34,143 nt of DNA from Macrostomum lignano (GCA_002269645.1 NIVC01004089.1:1-34143), one strand, 5' to 3'; shown: positions 1 through 31,771, counted from the stretch's first letter. The notes: generated from the letters alone by a model not told the origin. Made by a program: numbers and translations.

Positions 1-140
1 ATCTGACGACACCGTGGAGACAGGGCCTTGTAAGAGCGGTTTCCGCACCAGCATTCTTATCACTATCGCGCAACACCGAGGGACACTGCCAAAAGAATGT
101 GAAGAAGGTTACTAGCCCTGCAGATCGAAGAAAGCAACTG
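1..140 (+). CDS. Partial exon (module type A) of the Cys/Lys-rich repeat protein gene; frameshifted as written
   Basis: Frame 2 gives SDDTVETGPCKSGFRTSI; another frame gives RNTEGHCQKNVKKVTS. Both match module A (GPC..GFR.NI.Y...R..EG.C). About 3 missing bases are needed to restore the frame. GTGAGT donor at 141. Confidence 0.55.
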
Positions 141-214
141 GTGAGTTTCTGGTTTAGATTGGCTGCTGACAGTAGCAAACGAGTGTGATTTTGCTGCTCA
201 AAAACTCATTGCAG

Positions 215-385
215 AATGCCCTCCAAAGCGAGTGAAGAAGGTCGGAGGCTGCGAGGACCGGATCCAAAGGTGGCTCACAGTCTACTTCGAGTGGAACAAG
301 CTCAAGGGTCGGTGCGTGAAGAAGTTCAGAGCGAGAGAAAAACCGTGTAGAGAGGCTGCCTCAGGATCTACAGGAGCTGCAAAGA
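215..385 (+). CDS. Exon, module B (CPPKRVKKVGGC...RCVKKFRAREKPC)
   Basis: TTGCAG acceptor ends at 214; A|GTGAGT donor at 386; 171 nt, phase 1-1, open frame. Confidence 0.8.
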
Positions 386-486
386 GTGAGTAGACCAACT
401 AATTATCTCGAGCACGTACTGTACTTAGCCACAATTCCGGTACAACAGTCGAGCTACAATACTTCTCAATCTTCAATCGTTACCAG

Positions 487-828
487 GTAAAAAGTGTCCG
501 AAGCGACGAGTGATGGAGCCCGGACCGTGCATTGACGGATCCAGAAAGGTGCTCGTCGAGCATTATGAGTACAGTGAGAAGCGAGGTCGCTGTATCGCTC
601 ACAGAGACCTCATGCATCAGAAGTGCGGCGAGAAGGCCAAGAAGAAAAAGAAGAAGTCTACTCCCGGAGTCGACTTGAAGCACGAGTGTCCGGAGAAGAC
701 GGTCAATCAGGGAGCGTGTCGGAAGGGGGGCTACAGGACAGTGAACACAGTGTACTTTGTGTTTGTGAAGGCTCTGGGTCGATGTGTGAGGAAGGTCAAA
801 CAGGAGGACGAGAAGTGCGCCTTGCTGG
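487..828 (+). CDS. Exon, modules C1+C2 with poly-Lys linker
   Basis: ACCAG acceptor ends at 486; G|GTAAG donor at 829; 342 nt, phase 1-1; overlaps ORF 510..851. Confidence 0.85.
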
Positions 829-1289
829 GTAAGACATTAGCAATATTTTAATCAAAAAAAATTTTTCGATATGATTTTTTGATCCCCACTGTACCATGCA
901 GTACGAGTAATTCTATATTGTCTTGTATGTTGTTTTACCTTGCACTTAACGGTATTAGCTACTGCATTTAGCGCTTGTACTCTGCCTTTATGGCGAGACT
1001 GATATTTTCAGTCAGTCAGAAAGGCAGAAACTGCTGCAAAGACGTACTATAAATATTTTGATTGTCTCCGGATCTGTTCTTCTGTCTGAGTGTGGCACCA
1101 CACCAAGGCAGGATTTTTAAACACCTCAGGGACCAATTTCATGAAGCACTGCTAACTGTTACACTGTATTTCACAGCTGCTAGTGAACTTTTGGTTTTAT
1201 GAGTCTAGCTGTTGTAAACAGATTTTTACCAGCCTGCTAACTTTTGTCTTCACGAGCTAAAGTTTAGCATCCTTGATAGGCGACTAAGA

Positions 1290-1605
1290 ATGGAGATTCC
1301 ACTTTTCGACGCGCTTCAAGCAGCTGATCTCCCGGTCGATAGTCGTCTGCCGAGAGAGTTTAAAGATCGCATGAATTTCGCCGCCGCTGATGACTTTTAG
1401 CAGCGCTTCCGAATGAACCCAGAATTACGTTCAATTTCTGGCGGGGGTCTTTTGGCCCGAAGTTGGAATACGATGCGCCAAGAAGTAGAAGCTTGAGCGC
1501 ACGTGAGCAAACGCTGACCACTTTGCGATGCTACGCACCCATTAGTTTCTATCAGACGTACTCTGGGATGCAAATGGGCCTTCTGAATCGACAGTGACAA
1601 ATTTG
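1290..1605 (+). pseudogene. Degenerate PIF/Harbinger (HARBI1-like) transposase N-terminal fragment in intron
   Basis: Across one stop and two frameshifts it reads MEIPLFDA..RLPREFKDRMN...DDF*QRFRMNPEL / FNF....GPKL....RSRSLSAREQTLTTLRCYA...FY / GDANGPSESTV. This resembles the Harbinger N-terminal pattern F..RFRM...F..L...LS...QLL..LRYYA.G....GD..G.S.STV (recognised from memory). Confidence 0.6.
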
Positions 1606-2491
1606 AATTCGAAGTCACGAAATGCCGCTTCACTGGCCCAACGTCAGCGAGCTCCGAATATTTGAGCCTTCTCGCTTTAAAAGAGCCATATTCGCCCCCA
1701 CATACATGTAGATGTTTGCCTATGGCACAACCTGCTGTTAACTGGCTGGCTCTGCTAGTTAGCAGCTCAGACATGAAACCAAAGTTTCTCTCAACAGTCG
1801 GTTAGCAGCGTGAAGTGGGCCCAAAAGTGTATTTTTTGAAACAAATAGGTACGCTCGTAATGATTGCATTTTTTGCGCCCACCGTTACTACACTTATAGC
1901 GCTTCACTTACTTCATGTAATCTTAGTATGCGCAGCAGGGTTGAGGTCAGCATCCAATGAATTATTATCCGTTGCTCTGTTTAAAAGCTTAAAAGTTCGT
2001 GCACCTGCAATTTGTCGTTGGTCTTAACAGCTCTCGCCATGGCTTGAATAGCTTGTATGCATCAGGATCTAATGTACACGTACTTTGATCTTGATGTAGT
2101 GAAAGTTTTTGTGTACGCTCGTATAAACATAACGCAAAAATTTTAATACCCGAACGCATGGCGACAAATTGAGGGATAGCTACGATTTTCTACTAAACGC
2201 ATTCAAGCCTTTTTTTCTTAGAACAATGATTCGTCCACAAAAGGATATTTCATCTACATATTTAGGCCTGTAATTTTTTCATACATCATCATTGATTACG
2301 AGTATGTATCGAATTATAACGTTAAGCAGGGCTTTAACAACTACAAGTAGTTTACAATACTCACAGTAATGAAGTAAAAACTGAAATACGGATTTTTCGC
2401 AAAAGTCTGCTTCTTTGAGTGCAGGCGTTTACTTGTGAAGCTAAAAAGCAAATTTATATGATATAATATACACTTTATATTGAAAATTCAG

Positions 2492-2653
2492 TGAAAAACA
2501 AGAGCTGCCCAGCGGACGTCACTCAAGAAGTCGGACCCTGCGTGAACGGGTACCGCACTAACATCGTCTACACATTCAAGAGAGATCTGGAAGGTCGATG
2601 CGAGAAAAAGTCCAAGAAGATCACAATCACTTGCAGTGATGAGAAAGCCAAAG
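2492..2653 (+). CDS. Exon, module A (CPADVTQEVGPCVNGYRTNIVY...C)
   Basis: TTCAG acceptor ends at 2491; G|GTAAAT donor at 2654; 162 nt, phase 1-1. Confidence 0.8.
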
Positions 2654-2731
2654 GTAAATGCGAGAGTACGTATTTGCATTTTTCCAGGTAGTTCTGGATT
2701 AACAATGAATTGCCAATTTCGATAATTTCAG

Positions 2732-2902
2732 TCTGCCCTCCAAAGCGAGTGAAAAAGGTCGGAGGCTGCGAGGACCGGATCCAAAGGTGGCTCACAGTCT
2801 ACTTCGAGTGGAACAAGCTCAAGGGTCGGTGCGTGAAGAAGTTCAGAGCGAGAGAAAAACCGTGTGGAGAGGCTGCCTCAGGATCTACAGGAGCTGCAAA
2901 GA
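2732..2902 (+). CDS. Exon, module B (copy 2)
   Basis: TTTCAG acceptor ends at 2731; GTGAGT donor at 2903; 171 nt. Confidence 0.8.
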
Positions 2903-3003
2903 GTGAGTAGACCAACTAATTATCTCGAGCACGTACTGTACTTAGCCACAATTCCGGTACAACAGTCGAGCTACAATACTTCTCAATCTTCAATCGTCTC
3001 CAG

Positions 3004-3345
3004 GTAAAAAGTGCCCGAAGCGACGAGTGATGGAGCCCGGACCGTGCATTGACGGATCCAGAAAGGTGCTCGTCGAGCACTATGAGTACAGTGAGAAGCG
3101 AGGTCGCTGTATCGCTCACAGAGACTTCATGCATCAGAAGTGCGGCGAGAAGGCCAAGAAGAAAAAGAAGAAGTCTACTCCCGGAGTCGACCTGAAGCAC
3201 GAGTGTCCGGAGAAGACGGTCAACCAGGGCGCGTGTCGGAAGGGGGGCTACAGGACAGTGAGCACAGTGTACTTTGTGTTTGTGAAGGCTCTGGGTCGAT
3301 GTGTGAGGAAGGTCAAGCAGGAGGACGAGAAGTGCGCCTTGCTGG
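3004..3345 (+). CDS. Exon, modules C1+C2 (copy 2)
   Basis: CTCCAG acceptor ends at 3003; GTAAG donor at 3346; 342 nt. Confidence 0.85.
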
Positions 3346-3808
3346 GTAAGACATTAGCAATATTTTAATCAAAAAATAATTTTTCGATATGATTTTTTGA
3401 TCCCCACTGTACCATGCAGTACGAGTAATTCTATCTTGTCTTGTATGTTGTTTTACCTTGCACTTAATGGTATTAGCTACTGCATTTAACCGCTTGTACT
3501 CTACCTTTATGGCGAGACTGATATTTTCAGTCAGGCAGAAAGGCAGAAACTGCTGCAAAGACGTACTATAAATGTTTTGATTGTCTCCGGAACTGTTCTT
3601 CTGTCTGAGTGTGGCACCACACCAAGGCAGGATTTTTAAACACCTCAGGGACCAATTTCATGAAGCACTGCTAACTGTTACACTGTATTTCACAGCTGCT
3701 AGTGAACTTTTGGTTTTATGAGTCTAGCTGTTGTAAACAGATTTTTACCAGCCTGCTAACTTTTGTCTTCACGAGCTAAAGTTTAGCATCCTTGATAGGC
3801 GACTAAGA

Positions 3809-4124
3809 ATGGAGATTCCACTTTTCGACGCGCTTCAAGCAGCTGATCTCCCGGTCGATAGTCGTCTGCCGAGAGAGTTTAAAGATCGCATGAATTTCGC
3901 CGCCGCTGATGACTTTTAGCAGCGCTTCCGAATGAACCCAGAATTACGTTCAATTTCTGGCGGGGGTCTTTTGGCCCGAAGTTGGAATACGATGCGCCAA
4001 GAAGTAGAAGCTTGAGCGCACGTGAGCAAACGCTGACCACTTTGCGATGCTACGCACCCATTAGTTTCTATCAGACGTACTCTGGGATGCAAATGGGCCT
4101 TCTGAATCGACAGTGACAAATTTG
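3809..4124 (+). pseudogene. Second copy of the Harbinger-like transposase remnant (co-duplicated with the cassette)
   Basis: Near-identical to 1290-1605, with the same stop and frameshifts. Confidence 0.6.
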
Positions 4125-5015
4125 AATTCGAAGTCACGAAATGCCGCTTCACTGGCCCAACGTCAGCGAGCTCCGAATATTTGAGCCTTCTCGCTTTAAA
4201 AGAGCCATATTCGCCCCCACATACATGTAGATGTTTGCCTATGGCACAACCTTGCTGTTAACTGGCTGGCTCTGCTAGTTAGCAGCTCAGACATGAAACC
4301 AAAGTTTCTCTCAACAGTCGGTTAGCAGCGTGAAGTGGGCCCAAAAGTGTATTTTTTGAAACAAATAGGTACGCTCGTAATGATTGCATTTTTTGCGCCC
4401 ACCGTTACTACACTTATAGCGCTTCACTTACTTCATGTAATCTTAGTATGCGCAGCAGGGTTGAGGTCAGCATCCAATGAATTATTATCCGTTGCTCTGT
4501 TTAAAAGCTTAAAAGTTCGTGCACCTGCAATTTGTCGTTGGTCTTAACAGCTCTCGCCATGGCTTGAATAGCTTGTATGCATCAGGATCTAATGTACACG
4601 TACTTTGATCTTGATGTAGTGAAAGTTTTTGTGTACGCTCGTATAAACATAACGCAAAAATTTTAATACCCGAACGCATGGCGACAAATTGAGGGATAGC
4701 TACGATTTTCTACTAAACGCATTCAAGCCTTTTTTTCTTAGAACAACAATGATTCGTCCACAAAAGGATATTTCATCTACATATTTAGGCCTGTAATTTT
4801 TTCATACATCGTCATTGATTACGAGTATGTATCGAATTATGACGTTAAGCAGGGCTTTAACAAGTGCAAGTAGTTTACAATACTCACAGTAATGAAGTAA
4901 AAACTGAAATACGGATTTTTCGCCATAGTCTGCTTCTTTTAAGTGCAGGCGTTTACTTCTGAAGCTAAAAAGCAAAGTTATATGATATAATATACACTTT
5001 ATATTGAAAATTCAG

Positions 5016-5177
5016 TGAAAAACAAGAGCTGCCCAGCGGACGTCACTCAAGAAGTCGGACCCTGCGTGAACGGGTACCGCACTAACATCGTCTACACATT
5101 CAAGAGAGATCTGGAAGGTCGATGCGAGAAAAAGTCCAAGAAGATCACAATCACTTGCAGTGATGAGAAAGCCAAAG
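5016..5177 (+). CDS. Exon, module A (copy 2)
   Basis: TTCAG acceptor ends at 5015; GTAAAT donor at 5178; 162 nt. Confidence 0.8.
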
Positions 5178-5255
5178 GTAAATACGACAGTACGTGTTTG
5201 AATTTTTCCAGGTAGTTCTGGATTAACACTGAATTGCCCATTTCGATAATTTCAG

Positions 5256-5426
5256 TCTGCCCTCCAAAGCGAGTGAAGAAGGTCGGAGGCTGCGAGGACC
5301 GGATCCAAAGGTGGCTCACAGTCTATTTCGAGTGGAACAAGCTCAAGGGTCGGTGCGTGAAGAAGTTCAGAGCGAGAGAAAAACCGTGTAGAGAGGCTGC
5401 CTCAGGATCTACAGGAGCTGCAAAGA
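5256..5426 (+). CDS. Exon, module B (copy 3)
   Basis: TTTCAG acceptor ends at 5255; GTGAGT donor at 5427; 171 nt. Confidence 0.8.
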
Positions 5427-5527
5427 GTGAGTAGACCAACTAATTATCTCGAGCACGTACTGTACTTAGCCACAATTCCGGTACAACAGTCGAGCTACAA
5501 TACTTCTCAATCTTCAATCGTTACCAG

Positions 5528-5869
5528 GTAAAAAGTGTCCGAAGCGACGAGTGATGGAGCCCGGACCGTGCATTGACGGATCCAGAAAGGTGCTCGTCGA
5601 GCACTATGAGTACAGTGAGAAGCGAGGTCGCTGTATCGCTCACAGAGACTTCATGCATCAGAAGTGCGGCGAGAAGGCCAAGAAGAAAAAGAAGAAGTCT
5701 ACTCCCGGAGTCGACTTGAAGCACGAGTGTCCGGAGAAGACGGTCAATCAGGGCGCGTGTCGGAAGGGGGGCTACAGGACAGTGAGCACAGTGTACTTTG
5801 TGTTTGTGAAGGCTCTGGGTCGATGTGTGAGGAAGGTCAAACAGGAGGACGAGAAGTGCGCTCTCTTGG
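5528..5869 (+). CDS. Exon, modules C1+C2 (copy 3)
   Basis: ACCAG acceptor ends at 5527; G|GTGAGT donor at 5870; 342 nt. Confidence 0.85.
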
Positions 5870-5928
5870 GTGAGTTGTTGCTTCTTTAGAGCATGCTTCA
5901 TATTTGGGTGTGAGCGCTGGATTTAAGC

Positions 5929-6124
5929 TGTAGTCTGGCTTGTTGGTGCGCGTGCACTTAGATGTGCACGTCTGGCTGGTTTGGGGGTTGGGGTTTAGCG
6001 CTGCGGCGTGTGCGTGCTTAGGGTGGTTACACCCACCCCAACTTTGGCAATAAATATATTGGCGTGAGCCAGTGAGGTCTCCTCACGTTTTGTTATTCTC
6101 TGCAATTCAACCCACGGTCTTACA
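5929..6124 (+). repeat. 5' LTR (196 bp)
   Basis: TGTAGTCTGG...GGTCTTACA; identical by eye to 11067-11262; contains AATAAA. Confidence 0.96.
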
Positions 6125-6125
6125 C

Positions 6126-6138
6126 TGGTGGCAGCGGT
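6126..6138 (+). promoter_or_regulatory. Primer-binding site complementary to the tRNA-Leu 3' end
   Basis: TGGTGGCAGCGGT, 1 nt after the LTR; its reverse complement ACCGCTGCCA-CCA matches the 3' end of eukaryotic tRNA-Leu (AAG/TAG type). Confidence 0.85.
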
Positions 6139-6144
6139 CTCAGT

Positions 6145-7326
6145 ATGGCCAAATCAGAGCAAGCCAGTTTATTGCCTCCAAAGTTCAGCGGCGACTCCAA
6201 CGTGAGAATGTGGCTAAGCACGTTTGAGGACTTCGCCGACGACTGCGAATGGGACGACAAGAAGAAGGCAAAGAAGCTGAGACTGCTGGTGACAGGAGAA
6301 GCGCAAATCTTCGTCTGGGAGCAGCCGGCAGACGTGTCAGCCAGCTATGAAAGGCTGAAGGAGAAGCTGATCGAGTGCTTCGGCAACAGTCTGAGCTGCT
6401 ACAGAGCAATGGAGGAGTTTGAAGAGCGAAAGCGACAGCCCAACGAGTCGCTGAGGGAGCTCGCCTACAGCCTGAAGCTTCTCCACCTTCGGGCCCGCCC
6501 GGACGACTCCGTGGCGGCTCGGGAAAAGGACGTGAAGTTTCGTCTGATGCGCCTCCTGCCATCTGCCGTGAGAGATGCGCTGTTGAAGGACCAGGACGCG
6601 GACTCGTGTTCGCTGGCCGCCATCGTCGACAGAGCTGCGCAGCTTGAGCTGGTGAGCCACGCAACTACAGCCTCATCAGCCGCGGTGTCGGTAGAAGACA
6701 GACGGCTGAGCCAGCTGGAGCAGCAGATGCAGCAGCTGACAGCCGGGGTGGCACGAGACCAGCGTCCACGTCGCGCCCCTGGACACCCCGCCAATGTGGC
6801 AGGAGCTCCGTGCGTCCCTGCCATCGACGGGGTGACGAATTGGTCTCACCTCCGGGTATGCAGCCTGGGAGAGCTGTCCCCCAACGTTGGGTTGGCGGTG
6901 GATGGCGGTTTTTACAGCGTAAGTCGGTCTGCGGAGGAGCCCTGCGCACCGGGACTCGGGTCCCCACGCTCTCTGGCCACCCGCCGCAGGCCGCAAATTG
7001 GATTCCGCCGTCTACTGCCCGCCCGCGCAGGGTCAGCGCCCCGGCTGCATGGGGCTACGCCCCCGGTCCTATTAGCTACGTCTAGCTACAATGTCCGTGA
7101 CCCGAAAAAGAAAGAAAGAAAGCTGACAGCCAGCGTGCGAACGGGACCACCCGGAAGAGACAGGCGTCAGAAGGGACCCATTAGGTGCTTCAGCTGCGGC
7201 GAGCCGGGTCACATTGCTAGGCGGTGCCCAAAGGCGATCGGCAGCCGCTGCAGCCGGTGCTCAGGCAAGGGTCACTCCGCCGCGGTGTGCCCGACACCAA
7301 CTGGTCAGCCGCAGGGAAACTTCTGA
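6145..7326 (+). CDS. gag: Gag with two CCHC zinc knuckles, carrying a 129-codon in-frame insertion
   Basis: PPKFSGD..V..WL..FE capsid-like start; CFSCGEPGHIARRC and CSRCSGKGHSAAVC knuckles. Confidence 0.9.
   Translation: MAKSEQASLLPPKFSGDSNVRMWLSTFEDFADDCEWDDKKKAKKLRLLVTGEAQIFVWEQPADVSASYERLKEKLIECFGNSLSCYRAMEEFEERKRQPNESLRELAYSLKLLHLRARPDDSVAAREKDVKFRLMRLLPSAVRDALLKDQDADSCSLAAIVDRAAQLELVSHATTASSAAVSVEDRRLSQLEQQMQQLTAGVARDQRPRRAPGHPANVAGAPCVPAIDGVTNWSHLRVCSLGELSPNVGLAVDGGFYSVSRSAEEPCAPGLGSPRSLATRRRPQIGFRRLLPARAGSAPRLHGATPPVLLATSSYNVRDPKKKERKLTASVRTGPPGRDRRQKGPIRCFSCGEPGHIARRCPKAIGSRCSRCSGKGHSAAVCPTPTGQPQGNF
6745..6847 (+). ncRNA. HDV-like self-cleaving ribozyme (predicted fold)
   Basis: P1 GGGGU(G) 6745-6750 / (C)GCCCC 6774-6779; P2 GAGACCA 6755-6761 / UGGUCUC 6841-6847; P3 GCG/CGC around L3 UCCACGU 6765-6771; P1.1 CC 6766-6767 / GG 6781-6782; P4 CACCCCG 6784-6790 / CGGGGUG 6828-6834 plus UGGCAGG 6797-6803 / CCUGCCA 6817-6823; J4/2 ACGAAU with putative catalytic C6836. 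Confidence 0.8.
6745..7120 (+). mobile_element. Short non-autonomous non-LTR retroposon (SINE-like) nested in gag
   Basis: Flanked by the direct repeat AGCTGACAGCC (6734-6744 and 7121-7131); 3' tail GAAAAAGAAAGAAAGAA (7104-7120). Removing insert plus one TSD restores ..QQLTA|SVRTGPP.. of gag. Confidence 0.85.
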
Positions 7327-7372
7327 GGGTCGGCAGCCTGGGGCCAGCACCGACCCGCTCAAAAGGGGCCCT
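7314..7372 (+). promoter_or_regulatory. Programmed -1 ribosomal frameshift signal (slippery heptamer plus stem/pseudoknot)
   Basis: G GGA AAC (7314-7320) in the gag frame; 6-nt spacer; GGGTCGG 7327-7333 / CCGACCC 7350-7356 stem; pol is in the -1 frame. Confidence 0.85.
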
Positions 7373-10300
7373 CAGATCAGCGCCTTCAGTCTTCGTGAAG
7401 GTGCACTTTGGCAGCGTGTCAGCGCCTGCTCTGCTCGACACCGGCGCGCAAGTTTCGTTGATGGACAAGTCGCTGTTCGACAGACTGCAGTGCAAGATCG
7501 ACTCCACCGACATCGGTGCGCTGCCGACGGCTGTCGACGGATCCCGGCTGCGCTGCCTTGGCCTGTCAGCAGCGGATGTTTCGATCGGCCAGACCATCCG
7601 CGTGCGCCATCGCTTCACAGTCGTGGACGGCATCCAGCCCAGCCTGATCATCGGCATGGACTTCATTGGCGAGGTGTCGCAGGCGATGACCATTGACATT
7701 AAAGAAGGCGTCGTCAGGTTCGACGGCACAGCTGTGCCTTTCAGCAGCGAGCCGGCTCGAGCAGATTGTCGCCTGGTGCCGAGTGTCCTGGTGGCGCGTG
7801 TGGCGGCAACTACGGAGCTGCCCGCCCGCAGCGAGAAGCTGGTGTGGCTCAAGGTGGATTCCAGCGGCGAGCAGGGAGTCTTTGAGCCGTCTGAGGACTT
7901 CGTGAAGTCCACTGCCGTCCTGCCGGGCCGCGTGCTGGCGGTCTCGGACGACTGCCGCATCCCGGTGAAAATGTGCAACCTTGCAGAGGAGCCCGTGCTG
8001 CTGTACGCCAACAAGGCGGTCGGCACGTTCGAAGGCGCGATGACAGACGGGGACAGTCGCCAGGAGGCGGCCCAGGAGAACCCCGTCGGTTGGAACATCA
8101 ACGCGGAGCTGCCCGAACCGGATGCTGCGAGGCTGCGACAGCTGTTGGAGAGCAACGAGGACCTGTTCGCCAGGCACGAGTACGACCTGGGCACGACGGC
8201 GTTGCTGCAGCACCAAATCGAGCTGGAGCCGGGAGCGCGGCCACACCGGCAGGTCCAGCGCCGGCTGCCGCTGTCTGTGCGAGACCAGGTGGACAAGAAG
8301 ATCGGTCAGATGCTGGAAAGCGGCATCATCGAACCGTCGACATCGCCATGGGCCAGCAACCTGCTGGTGGTCCGCAAGAAGAACGGCGACATCAGACTGT
8401 GCACGGACTGGCGGCAGCTCAACGCCTGCACGGTCAAGGATGCATACCCGCTGCCGCACCTGCAGCAGGCCATGGATGCGCTTGTCGGATGCTCCTGGTT
8501 CTCCACCATCGACTGCCGGCAGGGCTACCACCAGGTGGAGGTGGCGGAGGAGGACCGGTACAAGACGGCTTTCTATTCGACGCGCGGCCTGATGCAATTC
8601 TGCAAGATGGGCTTCGGGATGTGCAATGCCCCGGCGACGTTCCAGCGGCTCATGGAGCTGGTGATGTCCGGCCTGTCCTGGGAGTCCGTGCTGACTTATA
8701 TCGACGACATCATTGTCTTCAGCAGGACGTTCGACGAGCACTTAGAGAGGCTGGCGGAAGTTTTTAAGCGGCTGCGAGACGCGGGACTCAAGCTGCACAA
8801 GGCCAAGAGCGCGTTCGGCCATCGCCGGGTGCTGTACCTGGGACACCTGATCAGCGAGCAGGGCATCGCACCGGATCCCGGCAAGGTCGAGGCCATTCGC
8901 AGCATGCCCAGCCCAACGACGAACGAGGAGGTGAAGCGGTTTCTTGGAATGCTGGGTTTCTACCGCCGGTTCATCCGAGGCTTCAGCCAGACGGCGAGGG
9001 TCCTGCACGACGTCAGCGTGAAATCGAGGGACTTCGCGTGGAGCAGCGACTGCGAGCGAGCGTTCCGCGAGTTGAAGGACCGGCTGACGACAGCTCCGGT
9101 GCTGAGACTGCCAGATTTCACCAAGCAGTTTGTGCTCAGCTGCGACAGCAGTCAGTTCGCCGTCGGCGCGGTGCTCAGCCAGCTGCACGGTGACGCCGAG
9201 CTGCCTGTGGCGTTCGCCTCTCGCACCCTCAACAAGGCCGAGCGCAACTACTCGGCGACCGACCGCGAGCTGCTGGCGCTTGTCTGGAGTTTGAAGCACT
9301 TCAGGACGTACCTGCTGAGTGTTCCGAGCTTCAGAGTCTACTCGGACCACCGGCCACTGCAAGGTCTGCTGGCAACGAAGGACCCCGAAGGTCGGCTGGC
9401 GCGATGGCTTTCTACGCTGCAGCAGTTTTCGTTCGAGCTGCTGTACCGGCCTGGCATGGACAACGTCGTGCCGGATGCGCTGAGCCGGGTGGCCGGCACG
9501 CGCCTGCAGCCTCGGTGGGACGACAGCCGCCTGCACGAGGAGCAACTGCAAGATCCGCTGCTGAGCAAGGCGTTCCAGGCGCTGACCGAAGGGATTGACA
9601 GCCTGTCCGATTCATGGGCGGCGCAGGTTCGCGAGCTGCTGGACGAGGCCTCGGTGAGCTCGGCGGGAGTCCTGCTGGTCGGTGGCCGGCCAGTCATTCC
9701 CGGTCACCTGCGGCCACATTTCCTGCAGCAGGCGCACTCGTGTGACCAGAGCGGACACCTCGGCGTCGACAAGACCGGAGCGAGATTGTCTGAGCGCTGC
9801 TGGTGGCCTGGTCTGCGACGGGACGTCGAGAACTGGGTGGCCAGCTGTGCGGTCTGCCTGGCCAAGAAGAGTCCAACCAAGCCGCAGAAGGCGCCGCTAC
9901 AGTCGACGTGCCAGCCGACGGCTCCGTGGCGGCTGGTGCAGATCGACATCAAAGGGCCGCTTCCGCGTACGACTGATGGCAAAGCGTACATCCTGAGCAT
10001 GTGCGACGCCTTCTCCAAGTGGATGGAGACGGCAGCCCTGGCGGCAATCGACGCGGTTACGGTGGCGGATGCGCTGCTCAAGTCGGTGGTTCTGCGTCAC
10101 GGCGCTCCTCAGGTGCTGCACAGTGACCAGGGACGGCAATTCGAGAGCGAGGTGTTCGGCCGGCTCTGCGAGAAGCTGGGCGTCGAAAAGACGCGCACGT
10201 CGCCGTTTCATCCGAGCGGCAACGGAATCGTCGAGCGAGGCAACCGGACGCTCGGCGATATGCTGGCGACGACGGTGGCCGAGAACCAGCAGGATTGGGA

Positions 10301-11030
10301 CAGCAAGCTGCCATATGTGACCTGGGCCTACAACACCTCCGTGCACAGCACCATCGGCCTCAGTCCGTACCAGGTCCTCCACGGCTGGCCACCGAGGCTG
10401 GATCTCGACAGCTGGCTGATAAGCGGCGACCGGCCGGCAGCCGACGGTGGACATCACGGCTTCCTGCGGCGGACTCAGGAGAACCTGCAGAGCGCCTTCG
10501 ACACGGTGCACGGCCGACTGCGGAGCGCCCAGGCCGAGCGCAACCGGCTGGCCAACCAGGACTCTCGGTTTGTGCCGTTCGAAGAGGGCCAGCTCGTGAT
10601 GCTGCGCAACTCCGTCGTCAAGCGCGGCCAGACGCGGTGTTTGAGCGCCAAGTGGAAGGGGCCGTACCGAGTCCTGAGGCGCCTGGGCGAGGTCAATTAC
10701 CGCATCCAGGACGAGACCGGCCGCAGGCGCCGGCTGGTGGTGCACCACGACCGCCTCAAGTGCTTCGTGCAGCGGCGGGCGTCACTGGAGCTTCCGGCCG
10801 CAGCAGACCACCAGCCGCCGGCCGCCGACTTCGACAACGACGACACCGTCGCTGAGCCGCCCGGGCAGGCGACCGATCCTGGCGGCGACGCGGTGACCTT
10901 CTGGCCCGAGCTGCAGGCAGACGAGGCACCCGAGGAGCAGCCGGCGGCACCGGCCGAGCCGGTCACGGTTCCGCGGCGGTCGGCGAGAGAGCGGCGGCCA
11001 CCTGACTTGTACATGGCGGGCTTTGCTTGA
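7314..11030 (+). CDS. pol: Pol polyprotein: protease, RT, RNase H, integrase (open ORF 7224-11030; translation probably enters via the frameshift at ~7320)
   Basis: ALLDTGAQVS (protease); YIDDII (RT); CDSS..AVGAVL, ELLA, SDH, DALSR (RNase H); H..SGHLG..C..C, DIKGP, HSDQG, ERGNRTL (integrase); WKGPYRV (GPY/F). No stops. Confidence 0.95.
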   Translation, partial: GKLLRVGSLGPAPTRSKGALRSAPSVFVKVHFGSVSAPALLDTGAQVSLMDKSLFDRLQCKIDSTDIGALPTAVDGSRLRCLGLSAADVSIGQTIRVRHRFTVVDGIQPSLIIGMDFIGEVSQAMTIDIKEGVVRFDGTAVPFSSEPARADCRLVPSVLVARVAATTELPARSEKLVWLKVDSSGEQGVFEPSEDFVKSTAVLPGRVLAVSDDCRIPVKMCNLAEEPVLLYANKAVGTFEGAMTDGDSRQEAAQENPVGWNINAELPEPDAARLRQLLESNEDLFARHEYDLGTTALLQHQIELEPGARPHRQVQRRLPLSVRDQVDKKIGQMLESGIIEPSTSPWASNLLVVRKKNGDIRLCTDWRQLNACTVKDAYPLPHLQQAMDALVGCSWFSTIDCRQGYHQVEVAEEDRYKTAFYSTRGLMQFCKMGFGMCNAPATFQRLMELVMSGLSWESVLTYIDDIIVFSRTFDEHLERLAEVFKRLRDAGLKLHKAKSAFGHRRVLYLGHLISEQGIAPDPGKVEAIRSMPSPTTNEEVKRFLGMLGFYRRFIRGFSQTARVLHDVSVKSRDFAWSSDCERAFRELKDRLTTAPVLRLPDFTKQFVLSCDSSQFAVGAVLSQLHGDAELPVAFASRTLNKAERNYSATDRELLALVWSLKHFRTYLLSVPSFRVYSDHRPLQGLLATKDPEGRLARWLSTLQQFSFELLYRPGMDNVVPDALSRVAGTRLQPRWDDSRLHEEQLQDPLLSKAFQALTEGIDSLSDSWAAQVRELLDEASVSSAGVLLVGGRPVIPGHLRPHFLQQAHSCDQSGHLGVDKTGARLSERCWWPGLRRDVENWVASCAVCLAKKSPTKPQKAPLQSTCQPTAPWRLVQIDIKGPLPRTTDGKAYILSMCDAFSKWMETAALAAIDAVTVADALLKSVVLRHGAPQVLHSDQGRQFESEVFGRLCEKLGVEKTRTSPFHPSGNGIVERGNRTLGDMLATTVAENQQDWDSKLPYVTWAYNTSVHSTIGLSPYQVLHGWPPRLDLDSWLISGDRPAADGGHHGFLRRTQENLQSAFDTVHGRLRSAQAERNRLANQDSRFVPFEEGQLVMLRNSVVKRGQTRCLSAKWKGPYRVLRRLGEVNYRIQDETGRRRRLVVHHDRLKCFVQRRASLELPAAADHQPPAADFDNDDTVAEPPGQATDPGGDAVTFWPELQADEAPEEQPAAPAEPVTVPRRSARERRPPDLYMAGFA

Positions 11031-11053
11031 CTCTGGAACTGTCTTTTGCTTCT

Positions 11054-11063
11054 AGGGGGAAAG
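11054..11063 (+). promoter_or_regulatory. Polypurine tract
   Basis: AGGGGGAAAG ending 3 nt before the 3' LTR. Confidence 0.8.
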
Positions 11064-11066
11064 TAG

Positions 11067-11262
11067 TGTAGTCTGGCTTGTTGGTGCGCGTGCACTTAGA
11101 TGTGCACGTCTGGCTGGTTTGGGGGTTGGGGTTTAGCGCTGCGGCGTGTGCGTGCTTAGGGTGGTTACACCCACCCCAACTTTGGCAATAAATATATTGG
11201 CGTGAGCCAGTGAGGTCTCCTCACGTTTTGTTATTCTCTGCAATTCAACCCACGGTCTTACA
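11067..11262 (+). repeat. 3' LTR (196 bp)
   Basis: Identical by eye to the 5' LTR; followed by the AAGC TSD. Confidence 0.96.
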
Positions 11263-11294
11263 AAGCCAATAATTCGAGCATTCTTGCTTTCTAG

Positions 11295-11453
11295 TAAAGC
11301 TGGCCTCCTGTCCAAAGGATGACGTAGTGGAGACCGGTCCGTGTCACCGCGGCTTCCGCACGAATATAATCTATCAATACACACGCGACCTGGAGGGCCG
11401 TTGCGCTCGCGCCGAAAAGTCTGTTACCGAAGAGTGCAAAGGCAGCACTGCTG
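11295..11453 (+). CDS. Exon, diverged module A (CPKDDVVETGPCHRGFRTNIIY...C)
   Basis: TTTCTAG acceptor ends at 11294; G|GTAAC donor at 11454; 159 nt, phase 1-1. Confidence 0.8.
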
Positions 11454-11860
11454 GTAACTACGAACACTATGTTTTCGTACTTTACGCTCGTATACTCGTA
11501 CAGTTGAGAGATGATCATAGGACTGCTGTCAGGCCAAGTGAGAATGTGGGCATCCACAAATGGCACTGCATGCGTAGTTAGCCCGTGTCCCTGTATAGTT
11601 AGCGGAACTCTAGCTGGTTTCAACGCGGGATAGAGGTATGTTCAAATTTTAAATTGCACCTACGGTGACGGTGTCAAATATAGATTTGTAGACAGGAATA
11701 CAGACATGAGTTGGATCCCTGTCAGTGGAATCCCAGTCAATGGAATTCCAGATGGAAATTCTCCTCCGTGGATTAGACGGTTAAATATGACGGCCAAAGT
11801 ATGATCCGAATCGCGTCATGAATAATTATTGTATGCTTGCCCTAACAACCATTCACCTAG

Positions 11861-12010
11861 ACTGTTTGCCTCCATCTCGTAAGCTGGCCAAACCGTGCTC
11901 AGCCTCTGGATTCGAGCGCTGGCTAACCACATACTATGTTTATAACAAGCTCAAGAAGCGCTGCGTGAGGAAGCTTCGAGTTAAAGAAGTTTCCTGTCAT
12001 CGAGTGAAAA
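11861..12010 (+). CDS. Exon, diverged module B (CLPPSRKLAKPC...RWLTTYYVYNKLKKRC...C)
   Basis: CCTAG acceptor ends at 11860; A|GTAAG donor at 12011; 150 nt, phase 1-1. Confidence 0.8.
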
Positions 12011-12141
12011 GTAAGCAGCTAGCGTACTGTGTCAAATGTACATGAGATAATACAAACTGACGCTTAAATAATAATTAAAACCAAAGTCAGTCTCCTAAAT
12101 TCAGACAAAACAGAACGCTTCCTCGCCCCAACAAACCGCAG

Positions 12142-12459
12142 AGTGCCCAACGCCGCGGGTGATCGAGCCCAGCCCCTGTAGCAAAGGCAAGCAGCGCCTG
12201 CTGATTGAGCACTACGAGCTGGACGCTAAGCTGGGCCGCTGTCGAATGAAGCAAGATTACGTAAATAGAAAATGCGGCAAGCCAACGAAGCGACAGGCCG
12301 CAGCGGCCAAGCACCACTGTCCGGACTCCACTTATCATCAGAAGCCCTGCCGGAAGGACGGCTACCGGAGCGTTCTGAAGATCTATTATCGATACAACTC
12401 GGCCAAAGGTCGATGCGTTAGAAACGTTCGAGTCGACGACGAGAAATGCAGCCGATTGG
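12142..12459 (+). CDS. Exon, diverged modules C1+C2
   Basis: CCGCAG acceptor ends at 12141; G|GTAAG donor at 12460; 318 nt, phase 1-1. Confidence 0.8.
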
Positions 12460-12534
12460 GTAAGGATTCTGCTACAATGCATTTGTATATTACGCATATT
12501 GATAGCTATATAACTACAATTCCTTCTCACAAAG

Positions 12535-12704
12535 TCGCCACGCGAGCCACCTGCAAAGCCGACGAGATGGTCGAAGAGGGCCCCTGCAAGAAGGGATTCC
12601 GGGAGAACATCATCTACAGGTACGAAAGGAACAAAGACGGCAGCTGCGTGAGGAAGGAGCGTCGAGTCAGCCTGGCTTGCGTTGAAAAGAAGGTTGTACC
12701 TTAG
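12535..12704 (+). CDS. Terminal coding exon, module A then stop (..CVEKKVVP*)
   Basis: Follows a 75-nt GT..AAG intron; TAG at 12702-12704. Confidence 0.75.
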
Positions 12705-12866: not shown

Positions 12867-12872
12867 AATAAA
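12867..12872 (+). terminator. Candidate polyadenylation signal of the repeat-protein gene
   Basis: AATAAA ~160 nt after the stop codon. Confidence 0.4.
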
Positions 12873-17835: not shown

Positions 17836-18209
17836 ATTTTCTCTCATGAAGCATGTAGACTGTGTGGAGCGAGAAATAGTTCCGATATCCTACACTACTT
17901 GACCGAATGTCCACAAACTGAAAAGATCAGAAAAAATACTTCTGTCAGTACCTCTTAAATGACAAGCAAGTACACAAGATAGGATATGCTACAAATGAAA
18001 AAAGAGTCAGAAAAGAGCTCACTGGTGTAGCTAAAATATATGATGTCATGAATAGTTAAAACAGTTCTGCAAACTGAAACAGATATATCAGCAGTGTAAT
18101 AAATCCGCTTTTCAGTTGTTTATTCATTGAAACAGATATATCAGCAGTGTAATAAATCCGCTTTTCAGTTGTTTATTCATTTACTGTCTTTTTAATTTCC
18201 TATTTAATT
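17836..18209 (+). mobile_element. 3'-end fragment of the adjacent LINE (zinc-knuckle coding region plus 3' UTR) placed directly upstream of it
   Basis: Matches 21851-22174 with scattered substitutions; contains an extra 53-bp tandem duplication (18075-18127 and 18128-18180). Confidence 0.9.
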
Positions 18210-21200
18210 CGTCGTTAATCGCAAGACGTTAAGTTCGTTCGAAGTGTGTTTATGCTTGTTTTTCACGCTTTAAAATATCACGCGCTTTCAAAAATACTAT
18301 ATCTTTTTACAAAAATCGCCTATTATTGAGAACAATCCTCAATTATACTAGATATTTGCTATATTGACAAAATAATATTTAACTACCTTTTCTGAATCGC
18401 ATTTTAGAAGAATCGTTTTGCATTAAGGTCATATTTATACAACATCGATTTTCTATTTTTCCCTGCTTAGATTCTTGCTGCTTCCGTCGTTAGTCGTTAA
18501 TCGGCTAAAAAACCGTAAAAAAATTCTTGACGCCCTTTCAAATACCTTACTTAATACAAAATACACTAGAAAGTACCTCATTTCTATTAGAAATAACAAT
18601 GCTCAAAAGATCAAAAAAATTCCTTACAATATCAAATCAAAACTCCTTGAATTTAATATTATCCAAAAAATTGATAAAGAAAAATTTACTATTAGCAGCT
18701 GGAATCTCAATGGACTTTACACAATAAAAGACTCTGTGATGATTCCCAAACTTGAACTACTGGAAACTGAATCAATTTTTAAGAATAATATTCTCTGCCT
18801 TCAAGAAACTTGGATAATAGACACAAAAAATGAAAACAAGCGACTCAAAATCAACAACCTGTCTGAAAACTACATGACATACCAAAAGCCTGCAAACAAA
18901 AAAGGCTGTAAATTCATTGGCAGAGCTTCTGGTGGATTATTAACAGCTTACAAAAAGTCACTAGATACACAATACAATGTTACAGAATCTTTCAAACATT
19001 ATAAAAACTTCTTGACACTAAATTTTAAACACAAAAAGGATAAAAACAAAAGCTTTACCTTAATAAACGCCCATATACCCCCACTGTCTTCAAAATATTA
19101 TGAAGAAGAAAATTGGGAACAGTTAACAATTCTCCTGGATGCTTATCACTCCGAAGAAAACATCTTCCTTATTGGAGACTTCATGCTCATATATACAATA
19201 CCTCGTACATAGATTTAAATTCAATATATACCACCAGAGCAAAAAACATCTCACTTACTAGACAAAGCCAAGACAAGAAAACCTGCAAAAATGGTAGACT
19301 ACTTAACCAGATTGCTGACTCATACAACCTGCATCTAATCAATGGTAGATCACTATCAGACACAAATGGTGAATTCACCTTTCTCTCAAAATCTGGTTCC
19401 TCTGTTATAGATCTCTGTTTCGTCTCTACCAGCTTACTCCAACACCTCGAAGACTTTAAAGTAAAGAACCACACCTACTTTAGCGACCACAACCAAATAG
19501 TGCTCTCCCTATCAAGTGAATTCACAGAGGAAATCACAGAAACTAAACAAGCAACCAATAACTCGAAAACGAGATACAGAGTCCTAAAAAAGTCACATAA
19601 ACCCAACCTGCAACAAGAAAAACATATCAATAACTTCGCAAATGACCTGAAAAACATGCATGACAAAATCACAAATCTAGACATACAAAACCCAGCTTTT
19701 ATAAATGAATTAAGTAGAAAAGTTAGACAAATTCAAAACAACATCACAGTAGAGATAAAGAACCCACTATGCTCAACACTGCCTCGTTTCCTTAAAGATT
19801 TAAGAAACGCTGCTAGACATGCCTGCAGAAGATATAAAACCTTCCCTACTCCCAACAACCTCTCAAGCAAAGTACAACTCAAAAAAGCATACGAAAAAAA
19901 GCTCACTTCATGGAAATTTGAAACAACTCTCTGTGCAGACAACATGATCAACCAGGCCTTTATTCAAAACGATACAAAACAACTTTGGAACTTATTAAAA
20001 ACACCAAATCCCTCAAACAACAGAGTAACAATTGATGAAAAATTTATCATACACTTTCAAAATCTTGTAACTGAACAAGACAGCAGCATTAGACTTTCAT
20101 ACAATCTTCACCTTGACAACCCTATTCTGGCTGATTTAGAGGATTTCAATGCCCCATTCACCAAAGAAGAAGTTATAAAACATTTTAAAAAGCTCAAAAC
20201 CGACAAAGCACCTGGGCACGATAAAGTATATGTAGAAACACTCAAATACCTCGAGAACGAACTTGCTGACCTCCTATGCTCACTTTTCAACGAAGCACTC
20301 AAACAAGGAACCTTCCCAACTAGTTGGATAACAAATACACTTCATCCGATTTATAAAAACAAAGGCAGCAGTGCCGACCCCAACAATTACAGAGGAATCT
20401 GCATTCAACCAATTCTTGGCAAGCTCTTTTGCCAAATTATTAAATCCAGACTCGAAAACCTAGCATACGCAAACAATCTTATATCAAAATACCAATACGG
20501 TTTCAAGCCCAATCACAGCACAATCGACCAATGTTTTAATCTTTACAACATTATAAACCAATCCATCTACAACAAAGAAGAACTCTTTATTGGATTTGTT
20601 GACTATGAAAAAGCCTTCGATAGCTTAAATCAACCGACCCTTTGGCACAAAACGGATAACCAGGGTATTAAAGGTCAAATGACGGAACTTATCAAGAACA
20701 TGCATAAAAATGCCTGCTTCATTCTAAAAAATGAAGATGATGATGATGAAACCCAGCCAATCCCAATATCAAAAGGTGTTCTTCAAGGCAACCCTCTCTC
20801 TACCATCCTTTTTGAACTATATATTGACGACATTGTTGAATATCTTGAACTCTCTAGCGCTAGGCGCTCTCTTACGAGATCTGCTTTCCCACTCATCCTA
20901 CTCTTTGCAGACGACGATCAAGCCATTCTAGCTAAAAACAAAGACGAACTTCAAGACACATTTACGACTATGGAAAATTACTGCAAACAAAATTACTTGA
21001 AAGTAAACGCAAGCAAAACAAAGTTCATGCAGGGCAATACCAGACAAAAAAACGACGCAGAAAGCATTGCTACAAAAATATACTACGACAACCAAGAAAT
21101 AGAGGAAGTAAATGAATTTAAATACCTGGGAATTATTTTTGAACCAAAAAACAGCTTTAAAAAATGTATTGAACACCAAACTAGCAGGGATATACAGCCA

Positions 21201-30403: not shown

Positions 30404-30529
30404 GTGAGTTTCAAGTTTTAGGATTGTTGTTTTGCTGTTCAAGAGGATTGAGGTTGTTAAAGGGCTTATTATCCTGCTGCTGGATCTCTGTAATAGTATC
30501 TGGATCCTCAGATAGATTATCTCGGTATA

Positions 30530-31741: not shown

Positions 31742-31771
31742 CTTATCAGAATCTCCCAAACCCTTTCCAAG

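What the first reader, a model, noticed from the sequence alone, without database searches (positions are those of the whole stretch)
1..12704. Unrecognised modular protein: about 17 tandem basic four-Cys domains with pleiotrophin/midkine-like spacing
Seen: splicing the 13 predicted exons gives about 930 aa of repeated modules, all C-x9/10-C-x19/21-C-x10-C, usually with G-x-C, (G)-x-R, a Tyr/Phe-rich strand and GRC. They are arranged (A-B-C1-C2)x4-A-stop and are rich in Lys/Arg. Established: the pleiotrophin C-terminal heparin-binding domain has C-x9-C-x21-C-x9-C spacing (1-3, 2-4 disulfides) and a TSR-like three-stranded sheet, and occurs in small two-domain proteins. Inference: a polymeric, disulfide-bonded, polyanion-binding extracellular protein (adhesive, cocoon/eggshell, seminal or antimicrobial precursor) from a family I cannot name. 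No signal peptide is visible because the 5' end lies outside the window.
Basis: partly seen in the sequence, partly recalled or inferred. Interest (0 to 1): 0.85.

Follow-up and report, generated by a model that had tools for sequence, protein, structure and literature searches.

The report
Secreted basic four-cysteine repeat protein, flatworm
The region holds most of a real, expressed gene of the flatworm Macrostomum lignano for a secreted, strongly positively charged protein made of 24 copies of a small four-cysteine domain found in no described family; its function is untested.

Summary
Window 1-12704 (+) holds 13 exons (12 complete, one cut by the contig end). All are phase 1-1 with AG/GT sites. 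They encode 16 intact four-Cys modules plus one partial module (C-x9/10-C-x19-21-C-x10-C), against 0.01 expected by chance.

The window is a whole Macrostomum lignano contig. The gene is already in GenBank as "hypothetical protein BOX15_Mlig000884g5, partial", and my model matches it. An overlapping contig supplies the 5' end. The full product is about 1352 aa: a signal peptide plus six B-C1-C2-A units (24 modules), pI 9.7, net charge +165.

AlphaFold predicts each module as a separate three-stranded antiparallel sheet joined by disordered Lys-rich linkers.

There is no Pfam, PDB-sequence or Foldseek match. The comparison with midkine/pleiotrophin gives 0.2% probability, so their shared cysteine spacing is a resemblance, not membership.

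Relatives are few: other M. lignano copies, a monogenean, unidentified transcripts, and possibly bacteria.

Published positional RNA-seq classes two related gene models as not limited to tail, testis or ovary. This argues against adhesive-organ, seminal or eggshell roles.

The most likely role, by inference only, is a body-wide extracellular binder of polyanions. This is an undescribed domain family of moderate interest.

The parts
1..140 (+). Exon A1, 3' part, cut by the contig start. It encodes an A-type module and has three 1-bp deletions relative to contigs L003 and L004.
   Evidence: the intact reading is seen in P0002
215..385 (+). Exon B1 (one B-type four-Cys module), phase 1-1
487..828 (+). 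Exon C1 (two modules, C1 and C2 types, joined by a KKKKKK linker), phase 1-1
2492..2653 (+). Exon A2 (one A-type module)
2732..2902 (+). Exon B2
3004..3345 (+). Exon C2 (two modules)
5016..5177 (+). Exon A3
5256..5426 (+). Exon B3
5528..5869 (+). Exon C3 (two modules)
208..5861 (+). Recent tandem genomic duplication, about 2.52 kb period and about 2.2 copies of [B exon - C exon - 1.67 kb intron - A exon]. Copies are about 97-98% identical.
5929..11262 (+). Intact Ty3/gypsy LTR retrotransposon inserted in the C3-A4 intron, which was about 87 nt before the insertion. It is not part of the protein. LTRs lie at 5929-6124 and 11067-11262, the target-site duplication is AAGC, gag is 6145-7326 and pol is 7224-11030.
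11295..11453 (+). Exon A4 (older, diverged unit)
11861..12010 (+). Exon B4
12142..12459 (+). Exon C4 (two modules)
12535..12704 (+). Exon A5 (last module) with stop codon TAG at 12702-12704
12867..12872 (+). AATAAA, candidate polyadenylation signal 163 nt after the stop codon
   Evidence: read from the sequence

Best explanation
Window 1-12704 (+) is the 3' two-thirds of an expressed Macrostomum lignano gene, GenBank PAA48661.1 (hypothetical protein BOX15_Mlig000884g5, partial). The 5' part lies on an overlapping contig (PAA67191.1).

The full product is about 1352 aa. It has a signal peptide followed by 24 modules of about 45 residues, each with four Cys, ordered as six B-C1-C2-A units.

Shown or predicted:
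- Each module is predicted to fold on its own into a three-stranded antiparallel beta-sheet.
- The linkers are short, Lys-rich and predicted to be disordered, so the protein is beads on a string.
- The mature protein is strongly cationic: 23.5% K+R, net charge +165, pI 9.7.
- All 96 Cys of the mature protein lie in modules.
- The coding exons are under purifying selection.
- The four-module unit is conserved in a monogenean flatworm.
- Two related gene models are not restricted to tail, testis or ovary in published RNA-seq.

Inferred:
- Two disulfides (1-3 and 2-4) pin each sheet.
- The protein is secreted from somatic cells along the body. It acts as a multivalent electrostatic binder or cross-linker of polyanionic material: sulfated or acidic glycans of mucus, glycocalyx or extracellular matrix, or microbial surfaces. 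Many weak cationic modules on a flexible chain would give high avidity.

The producing cell type and the ligand are unknown.
For: Gene model and chance test. Identity with the deposited protein and the organism.

5' end and signal peptide: the overlapping contig is 99.87% identical over 10 kb. Composition and module count.

Fold: the single-module AF2 model has pLDDT 86 with strands 6-9, 17-27 and 33-43. The four-module AF2 model shows four such sheets, linkers with pLDDT <50 and pTM 0.27.

Selection: between recent exon copies, synonymous changes exceed non-synonymous ones, for example C2 vs C3 with 7 against 0. All 16 Cys of the unit are invariant across M. lignano, P0004 and Cichlidogyrus.

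Expression, from Brand et al. 2020, PMC7336406, Tables S6, S8 and S9. Mlig000808.g3 is P0003, a second genomic copy of this gene. Its counts in fragments A/B/C/D (A = head only, D = whole worm) are 239/271/302/341, class 'Non-Specific'. Mlig000884.g7 gives 157/147/180/179, also 'Non-Specific'.

The family is small and unnamed.
Against: No ligand, localisation or secretion has been tested. The function rests on charge, the signal peptide and the architecture.

Cardin-Weintraub heparin-binding motifs are not enriched: 11 observed against 7.1 +/- 2.4 in shuffles.

The disulfide pairing is deduced from strand geometry, not read from coordinates.

The expression data are for sister gene models, not Mlig000884.g5 itself. 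Only Mlig000808.g3 was shown by sequence to be a copy; that Mlig000884.g7 is related is assumed from its cluster number. Bulk fragment data cannot name a cell type.

A 5.3-kb retrotransposon sits in one intron and could impair this particular copy.

The AF2 alignments are shallow (8-9 sequences).
Confidence: 0.5

Rival explanations
1. The modules are diverged members of the midkine/pleiotrophin (TSR superfamily) heparin-binding domain. The protein would then be a polymerised MK/PTN-like glycosaminoglycan-binding factor.
For: The Cys spacing is similar: C-x9/10-C-x19-21-C-x10-C against C-x9-C-x21-C-x9-C in the MK/PTN C-domain sequences used. Both are basic. Both are three antiparallel strands with two disulfides (PMC3267162).
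Against: hhalign probability is 0.2% against both human MK and PTN. There is no PF01091 or PF05196 hit even at E<=10, while the controls hit at about 1e-27. PDB profile searches find no MK/PTN chain at E<=10. No MK/PTN or TSR structure is among the 50 Foldseek matches listed. The conserved Trp after Cys1 is absent; the position is Pro in 84% of modules. The same module profile reaches 89% probability with an unrelated-looking bacterial repeat, so the method can detect distant relatives.
Confidence: 0.07
2. It is a glue, cement, eggshell or seminal-fluid protein made in a specialised gland of the tail or reproductive tract.
For: It is secreted, Cys-rich, very basic and repetitive, like many bioadhesive proteins. 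M. lignano adhesion depends on cationic Lys/Arg-rich regions of Mlig-ap1 and is blocked by heparin (PMC6410801).
Against: Positional RNA-seq classes two related gene models as 'Non-Specific', with head-fragment counts about equal to whole-worm counts. Tail-, testis- and ovary-limited genes show zero counts in the head fragment in the same table. The protein is not Mlig-ap1 or Mlig-ap2, which are 5,407 and 14,794 aa with VWD, TIL, EGF and TSP-1 domains. None of the three gene-cluster ids occurs in the supplementary files held for the seminal-fluid screen paper, though those files may not use these ids.
Confidence: 0.07
3. It is a polyprotein precursor or multivalent immune effector. Single cationic disulfide-stabilised modules, or the whole chain, would bind and damage or agglutinate microbes in mucus or gut.
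For: The modules are cationic, disulfide-stabilised small beta-sheets. Expression is body-wide in somatic tissue. Dibasic sites are abundant. There is copy-number variation of the recent [B-C-A] repeat between genomic copies.
Against: Dibasic sites are not concentrated in linkers; many lie inside modules, for example CPKRRV. The ordered four-module unit is conserved between distant flatworms, which fits a structural chain better than a set of released peptides. No similarity to known antimicrobial families was found.
Confidence: 0.15
4. This copy is a decaying pseudogene or an assembly artefact of a repeated sequence.
For: The first 140 bases are out of frame. A 5.3-kb retrotransposon lies in an intron. 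The near-identical 2.5-kb repeats could be mis-assembled. Deposited models differ in repeat number.
Against: The three indels are 1-bp deletions at the extreme contig end and are absent from two other contigs. All other exons are open with intact splice sites. The copies differ by about 2-3%, with synonymous changes in excess. The element sits cleanly in an intron with a target-site duplication. Related gene models have RNA-seq counts.
Confidence: 0.03

Closest known systems
Midkine / pleiotrophin C-terminal domain (Pfam PF01091 PTN_MK_C; TSR superfamily)
   Same: A small basic extracellular domain with four Cys at nearly the same spacing, two disulfides and three antiparallel strands. A heparin/GAG-binding role is plausible for both.
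   Different: No sequence, profile or Foldseek similarity. No Trp after Cys1. There is no N-domain or hinge. Here there are 24 tandem copies in a 150-kDa chain instead of a 13-kDa two-domain cytokine.
Macrostomum lignano adhesion proteins Mlig-ap1 and Mlig-ap2 (Wunderer et al. 2019, PMC6410801)
   Same: Same species. Both are secreted, large and repetitive. Mlig-ap1 has extremely cationic Lys/Arg regions whose function is blocked by heparin.
   Different: As described in the paper, Mlig-ap1 pairs Lys/Arg-rich regions with a separate block of known domains (C-type lectin, VWD, C8, TIL, EGF), and Mlig-ap2 has VWD, TIL, LDL and TSP-1 domains plus 221- and 255-aa repeats. Both are expressed in adhesive glands of the tail. 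The two related models of the present gene are not tail-limited.
Tandem small disulfide-rich extracellular modules in general (TSR, EGF, sushi/CCP, FN1) encoded by phase 1-1 exons
   Same: Beads-on-a-string architecture, symmetric phase-1 exons that allow duplication and exon skipping in frame, and 1-3/2-4 disulfide logic as in sushi and FN1 (the comparison rests on established knowledge of these families).
   Different: The signature does not fit any of them. It is C-P-x8/9-C-x2-G-x-R-...-aromatic-...-G-[KR]-C-x10-C over 43-45 residues. No Pfam model matches.
Bacterial Thr/Ser-rich repeat proteins (P0009 from MAG GCA_035018645.1; a relative in Undibacterium sp. GrIS 1.8)
   Same: Modules with C-P, C-x9-C-x20-C-x10-C spacing and a central aromatic residue. 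hhalign probability is 89% over all 42 aligned columns and HMMER E is 2e-6.
   Different: They are not basic but rich in Thr, Ser, Gly and Asn. They occur in a prokaryotic context. Homology against convergence is unresolved.

Membership tests
PTN/MK heparin-binding family (PF01091 / PF05196) | Significant match to the Pfam C-domain or N-domain model | tested here: not met
   No hit at E<=10 for the modules or whole proteins. The positive controls, human MK and PTN, hit both models at about 1e-27.
PTN/MK heparin-binding family (PF01091 / PF05196) | Profile or structure similarity to MK/PTN | tested here: not met
   hhalign probability 0.2%. PDB profile searches return no MK/PTN chain. The 50 Foldseek matches listed contain none.
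PTN/MK heparin-binding family (PF01091 / PF05196) | Conserved Trp downstream of the first Cys of each domain (TSR-like) and a 10-Cys two-domain layout with hinge and tails (PMC3267162) | tested here: not met
   The position after Cys1 is Pro in 84% of 49 modules and there is no conserved Trp. The architecture is 24 x 4 Cys.
PTN/MK heparin-binding family (PF01091 / PF05196) | C-domain: four Cys, two disulfides, three antiparallel strands | tested here: inconclusive
   The spacing and the predicted three-stranded sheet agree. However, the feature is generic and the disulfide map was not read from coordinates.
Thrombospondin type-1 repeat (TSR) | WxxW motif, Trp-Arg layered core, six Cys, Pfam PF00090 match | tested here: not met
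   Four Cys per module and 0.6% Trp overall. No Pfam hit.
M. lignano adhesive-organ proteins (Mlig-ap1/ap2) | [quoted passage not shown] | tested here: not met
   Two related gene models are in positional class 'Non-Specific', with head-fragment counts about equal to whole-worm counts. None of those domains is present.
M. lignano putative seminal fluid proteins (prostate-limited, tail class) | Tail-limited expression in positional RNA-seq and prostate in situ signal | tested here: not met
   Not in the tail class. The three gene-cluster ids do not occur in the supplementary files held for the screen paper. In situ hybridisation was not done.
Secreted extracellular protein | N-terminal signal peptide, even Cys count confined to modules, phase 1-1 module exons | tested here: met
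   The N-terminus is MRRQRLLPPILLLLALILLLLDCGQC on the overlapping contig's protein. The signal peptide was judged by eye; no predictor was available. There are 96 Cys, equal to 24 x 4. Relatives P0004 and P0005 also start with hydrophobic leaders.
Ty3/gypsy LTR retrotransposon (the intron insertion at 5929-11262) | Identical LTRs with TG..CA ends, target-site duplication, gag with CCHC, pol in the order PR-RT-RNaseH-INT | tested here: met
   196-nt LTRs are 100% identical. The TSD is AAGC, with a primer-binding-site-like TGG and a purine tract. Pfam domains appear in that order.

The most novel reading that the evidence does not exclude
The module is a previously undescribed extracellular domain family: a four-Cys, three-stranded mini-sheet with the signature C-P-x8/9-C-x2-G-x-R...aromatic...G-[KR]-C-x10-C. 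It would be shared by free-living and parasitic flatworms, unidentified meiofaunal animals and possibly Burkholderiales-type bacteria. In flatworms it has been multiplied into a polycationic chain that is a structural glycan-binding component of body-wide secretions such as mucus or rhabdites, or of the matrix. That would be a class of protein not yet characterised in flatworm biology.
Probability: 0.3. Interest if true: 0.55.

Novelty: new variant of a known kind. Interest (0 to 1): 0.4.

Why it matters
If the inference holds, this is a new small disulfide-stabilised domain and a natural polycationic beads-on-a-string protein in a genetically tractable flatworm. It would be relevant to how flatworm mucus, glycocalyx or matrix is organised. 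It would also be relevant to charge-based biological adhesion and release, which M. lignano already exemplifies. The conserved four-module unit in a monogenean parasite suggests an old flatworm-wide function. The gene also shows how phase-1 exon cassettes expand by recent tandem duplication and tolerate a retrotransposon in a tiny intron. It is not a surprise of principle: secreted Cys-rich repeat proteins without annotation are common in invertebrate genomes.

Tried and rejected
- The search for homologous proteins was run with the 265-aa last unit and with a 49-module alignment. Both returned nothing. The exhaustive HMMER search and the cluster look-up show that the proteins are in the collection, so the word-index search simply missed them.
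- Pfam on modules, whole proteins and relatives gave nothing credible. A borderline whole-protein score for EVH1_PP4R3 (27.5-28 bits against a cut-off of 27) is the sum of three partial matches (profile positions 39-90) to near-identical repeat copies. It drops to 18.8 bits with two copies. I rejected it as a repeat artefact.
- The UniRef names of older gene models (SUEL-type lectin, VWFD and DUF4789 'domain-containing') were not reproduced by Pfam scans at E<=10.
- PDB sequence profile searches found nothing relevant.
- Foldseek with the single-module and four-module models returned only generic beta fragments: E>0.2 for the single module, and rmsd above 20 A for the four-module model.
- Literature searches for the gene ids, the SRA run and the JGI sample found nothing in main texts. 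DUF4789 occurs in one unrelated paper.
- The A1 frameshifts were considered as evidence for a pseudogene. I rejected this after comparison with L003 and L004.
- Cardin-Weintraub motif enrichment was tested and is not significant.

Full report
**1. What is in the sequence**

The first 13 kb have about 43-47% G+C, apart from a block of about 5.3 kb at about 63%. Stop-to-stop translation of the + strand shows repeated Cys-containing peptides.

Reading the DNA around them gives canonical AG acceptors and GT donors. Every exon starts with two bases that complete a codon and ends with one extra base, so all exons are phase 1-1.

The exons are:
- A1 (partial) 1-140, B1 215-385, C1 487-828
- A2 2492-2653, B2 2732-2902, C2 3004-3345
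- A3 5016-5177, B3 5256-5426, C3 5528-5869
- A4 11295-11453, B4 11861-12010, C4 12142-12459
- A5 12535-12704, ending with stop codon TAG

An AATAAA lies at 12867-12872. A and B exons carry one module each and C exons carry two. Spliced from B1 to the stop, the product is 886 aa.

A pattern scan finds 16 intact modules, all in this gene and on this strand, against 0.01 expected in shuffled sequence.

**2. Where the window comes from, and the missing 5' end**

An exhaustive HMMER search with a nine-module profile found 13 proteins at E<=0.001 among 1.84 billion representatives. The cluster look-up names the best ones as Macrostomum lignano proteins. It also shows that PAA48661.1 ('hypothetical protein BOX15_Mlig000884g5, partial', 893 aa) lies on a contig of exactly 34,143 bp. 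Its sequence equals my spliced model plus seven residues of A1.

Window 1-10082 is 99.87% identical to the end of contig NIVC01001502.1 (L004). That contig carries PAA67191.1 (P0002). P0002 starts MRRQRLLPPILLLLALILLLLDCGQC and continues with eight more modules before reaching B1.

Joining the two gives a protein of about 1352 aa: a signal peptide plus 24 modules ordered (B-C1-C2-A)x6. The mature protein has these properties:
- pI 9.7
- K 14.3%, R 9.2%, C 7.2%
- net charge +165
- 96 Cys, exactly 24 x 4

The A1 piece at the window start is out of frame. This is because of three single-base deletions that are absent from both L004 and a second genomic copy, L003. This is a contig-end error, not decay.

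**3. History of the locus**

Positions 208-5861 are about 2.2 copies of a 2.52-kb unit (B exon, C exon, 1.67-kb intron, A exon). The copies are about 97-98% identical. Between copies, synonymous codon changes outnumber non-synonymous ones: 6 against 2 for C1 vs C2, and 7 against 0 for C2 vs C3. This indicates purifying selection. The last unit (A4-B4-C4-A5) is old and diverged.

Contig NIVC01000834.1 (L003) has two rather than three recent copies. Deposited models differ in repeat number and in the presence of B exons. Because every exon is phase 1-1, any cassette can be duplicated or skipped in frame.

An intact Ty3/gypsy element lies at 5929-11262. It has these features:
- 196-nt LTRs that are 100% identical
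- a target-site duplication AAGC and TG..CA ends
- gag with a CCHC zinc knuckle
- pol in the order protease, RT, RNase H, integrase

It lies in what was an intron of about 87 nt between C3 and A4. The same insertion is present in L003.

**4. The module and its relatives**

In a 49-module alignment only the four Cys are invariant. Other frequent features are:
- Pro after Cys1 in 84% of modules
- Gly at three positions in 51-63%
- an Arg/Lys two residues after the Gly that follows Cys2 in 53%
- an aromatic residue in the middle strand in 90%
- [KR] before Cys3 in 59%
- a basic stretch after Cys3

The credible relatives are few:
- other M. lignano copies and gene models
- a complete 502-aa transcript from run SRR26183987, with a leader peptide and nine modules
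- a 426-aa intronless gene of the monogenean Cichlidogyrus casuarinus
- short ENA and Logan fragments
- a 964-aa Asn/Thr-rich protein on a metagenome contig that also carries a metazoan LINE fragment

The ordered four-module unit aligns module for module between M. lignano, the SRR26183987 transcript and Cichlidogyrus, with all 16 Cys invariant. The super-repeat is therefore old within flatworms.

A protein from a bacterial MAG (P0009; a relative occurs in Undibacterium sp.) has Thr/Ser-rich modules with the same spacing. hhalign gives 89% probability against the flatworm profile. Homology against convergence is open.

**5. Fold**

AlphaFold2 on one module with nine aligned sequences gives pLDDT 86 and three strands at 6-9, 17-27 and 33-43. 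On a four-module unit with eight aligned units it gives four such sheets. The linkers have pLDDT <50 and pTM is 0.27, so the modules are independent beads.

Cys3 and Cys4 lie at the two ends of the same strand, and Cys2 and Cys4 lie at the open end of the hairpin. The only geometrically sensible pairing is therefore 1-3 and 2-4.

Foldseek against the PDB gives no significant match. The listed hits are generic beta fragments, and no midkine, pleiotrophin or TSR entry is among the 50 listed.

**6. Comparison with what is known**

No Pfam model matches the modules, the whole protein or any relative. A borderline EVH1_PP4R3 score is the sum of partial matches to identical repeat copies. The UniRef labels (SUEL lectin, VWFD, DUF4789) are not reproduced.

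PDB sequence profile searches are empty. The midkine/pleiotrophin idea was tested directly:
- hhalign of the module profile against them gives 0.2% probability.
- The family's hallmark Trp after the first Cys (PMC3267162) is absent.

The spacing and the three-stranded, two-disulfide layout are thus a resemblance, not membership.

The protein is also not one of the M. lignano adhesion proteins. Those are 5,407 and 14,794 aa with VWD, TIL, EGF and TSP-1 domains and adhesive-gland expression (PMC6410801).

**7. Expression and likely function**

The evidence comes from the re-analysis of the positional data set in Brand et al. 2020 (PMC7336406, Tables S6, S8, S9). Fragment A is the head only and fragment D is the whole worm.

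- Mlig000808.g3 is 1851 nt and equals P0003, the second genomic copy. Its counts in fragments A/B/C/D are 239/271/302/341.
- Mlig000884.g7 has counts 157/147/180/179. That it is a relative of this gene is assumed from its cluster number only.
- Both are classed 'Non-Specific'.
- Genes limited to tail, testis or ovary have no counts in the head fragment in the same table.
- Mlig000808.g3 is also lower in worms kept in groups of eight than in isolated worms (log2 fold change -1.25, adjusted p 0.005).

This argues against adhesive-organ, prostate/seminal and eggshell/cement roles. It points to somatic cells present along the body.

My best explanation combines this with four other features: the signal peptide, the disulfide-stabilised modules, the flexible Lys-rich linkers and the net charge of +165. 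On that basis the protein is most likely a secreted multivalent polycation that binds or cross-links polyanionic glycans or surfaces, such as mucus, glycocalyx, matrix or microbes.

This is inference. Heparin-binding consensus motifs are not enriched and no cell type is known.

**8. Verdict**

The finding is real and accurately described. The gene is already deposited as a hypothetical protein. Its domain family is undescribed and small. The midkine/pleiotrophin link is unsupported. Three of the four proposed roles are disfavoured by published expression data. Interest is moderate.

Noticed in passing
window 5929-11262 (+): An apparently intact, very young Ty3/gypsy retrotransposon. The LTRs are 100% identical, the target-site duplication is AAGC, gag and pol are open, and G+C is 63% against about 43% in the host gene. 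It is inserted in sense orientation in an intron that was only about 87 nt long. The same insertion, with an internal deletion of about 360 bp, is in a second genomic copy of the gene (L003).
   Followed up: partly
window 1-140: Three single-base deletions relative to two other M. lignano contigs break the reading frame of exon A1 at the extreme contig end. This is probably an assembly or polishing error.
   Followed up: yes
window 18475-21973 (+): A non-LTR (LINE) retrotransposon with endonuclease and reverse transcriptase domains. Its reading frame is split into three overlapping ORFs, so it is probably decayed or carries indel errors.
   Followed up: partly
window 24358-24957: Short ORFs on both strands that look like a mariner/Tc1-type transposase remnant. 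Pfam gave no hit for the one piece tested.
   Followed up: no
window 29722-30561 and 31723-32703 (+), with repeat at 30530-31741: Two large exons of an MFS transporter (Spinster-like by my reading; Pfam hit is MFS_1). They are separated by a 21-bp minisatellite of about 58 copies (consensus TTCAGGTAGATTATTGAAATC) that fills the gap between them.
   Followed up: partly
window 33374-33762 and 18075-18181: A 163-bp tandem repeat (2.4 copies, 94% identical) and a perfect 53-bp x2 repeat, both of unknown meaning.
   Followed up: no
L005 2412-4801 (MAG GCA_035018645.1) and L007 3001-4053 (Undibacterium sp. GrIS 1.8): Bacterial secreted proteins built of Thr/Ser-rich modules with the same C-P...C-x9-C-x20-C-x10-C layout as the flatworm modules (hhalign probability 89%). 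This may be a distant relative or convergence.
   Followed up: partly
L003 and L004, upstream of the gene (minus strand): Both M. lignano copies of the gene have a G-alpha subunit gene as upstream neighbour on the opposite strand, which confirms that they are copies of one locus.
   Followed up: no
L002 1-264: The metagenome contig that carries the 964-aa Asn/Thr-rich relative also holds the C-terminal end of a metazoan-type LINE reverse transcriptase. The relative is therefore from an animal (probably meiofauna), not a microbe.
   Followed up: no
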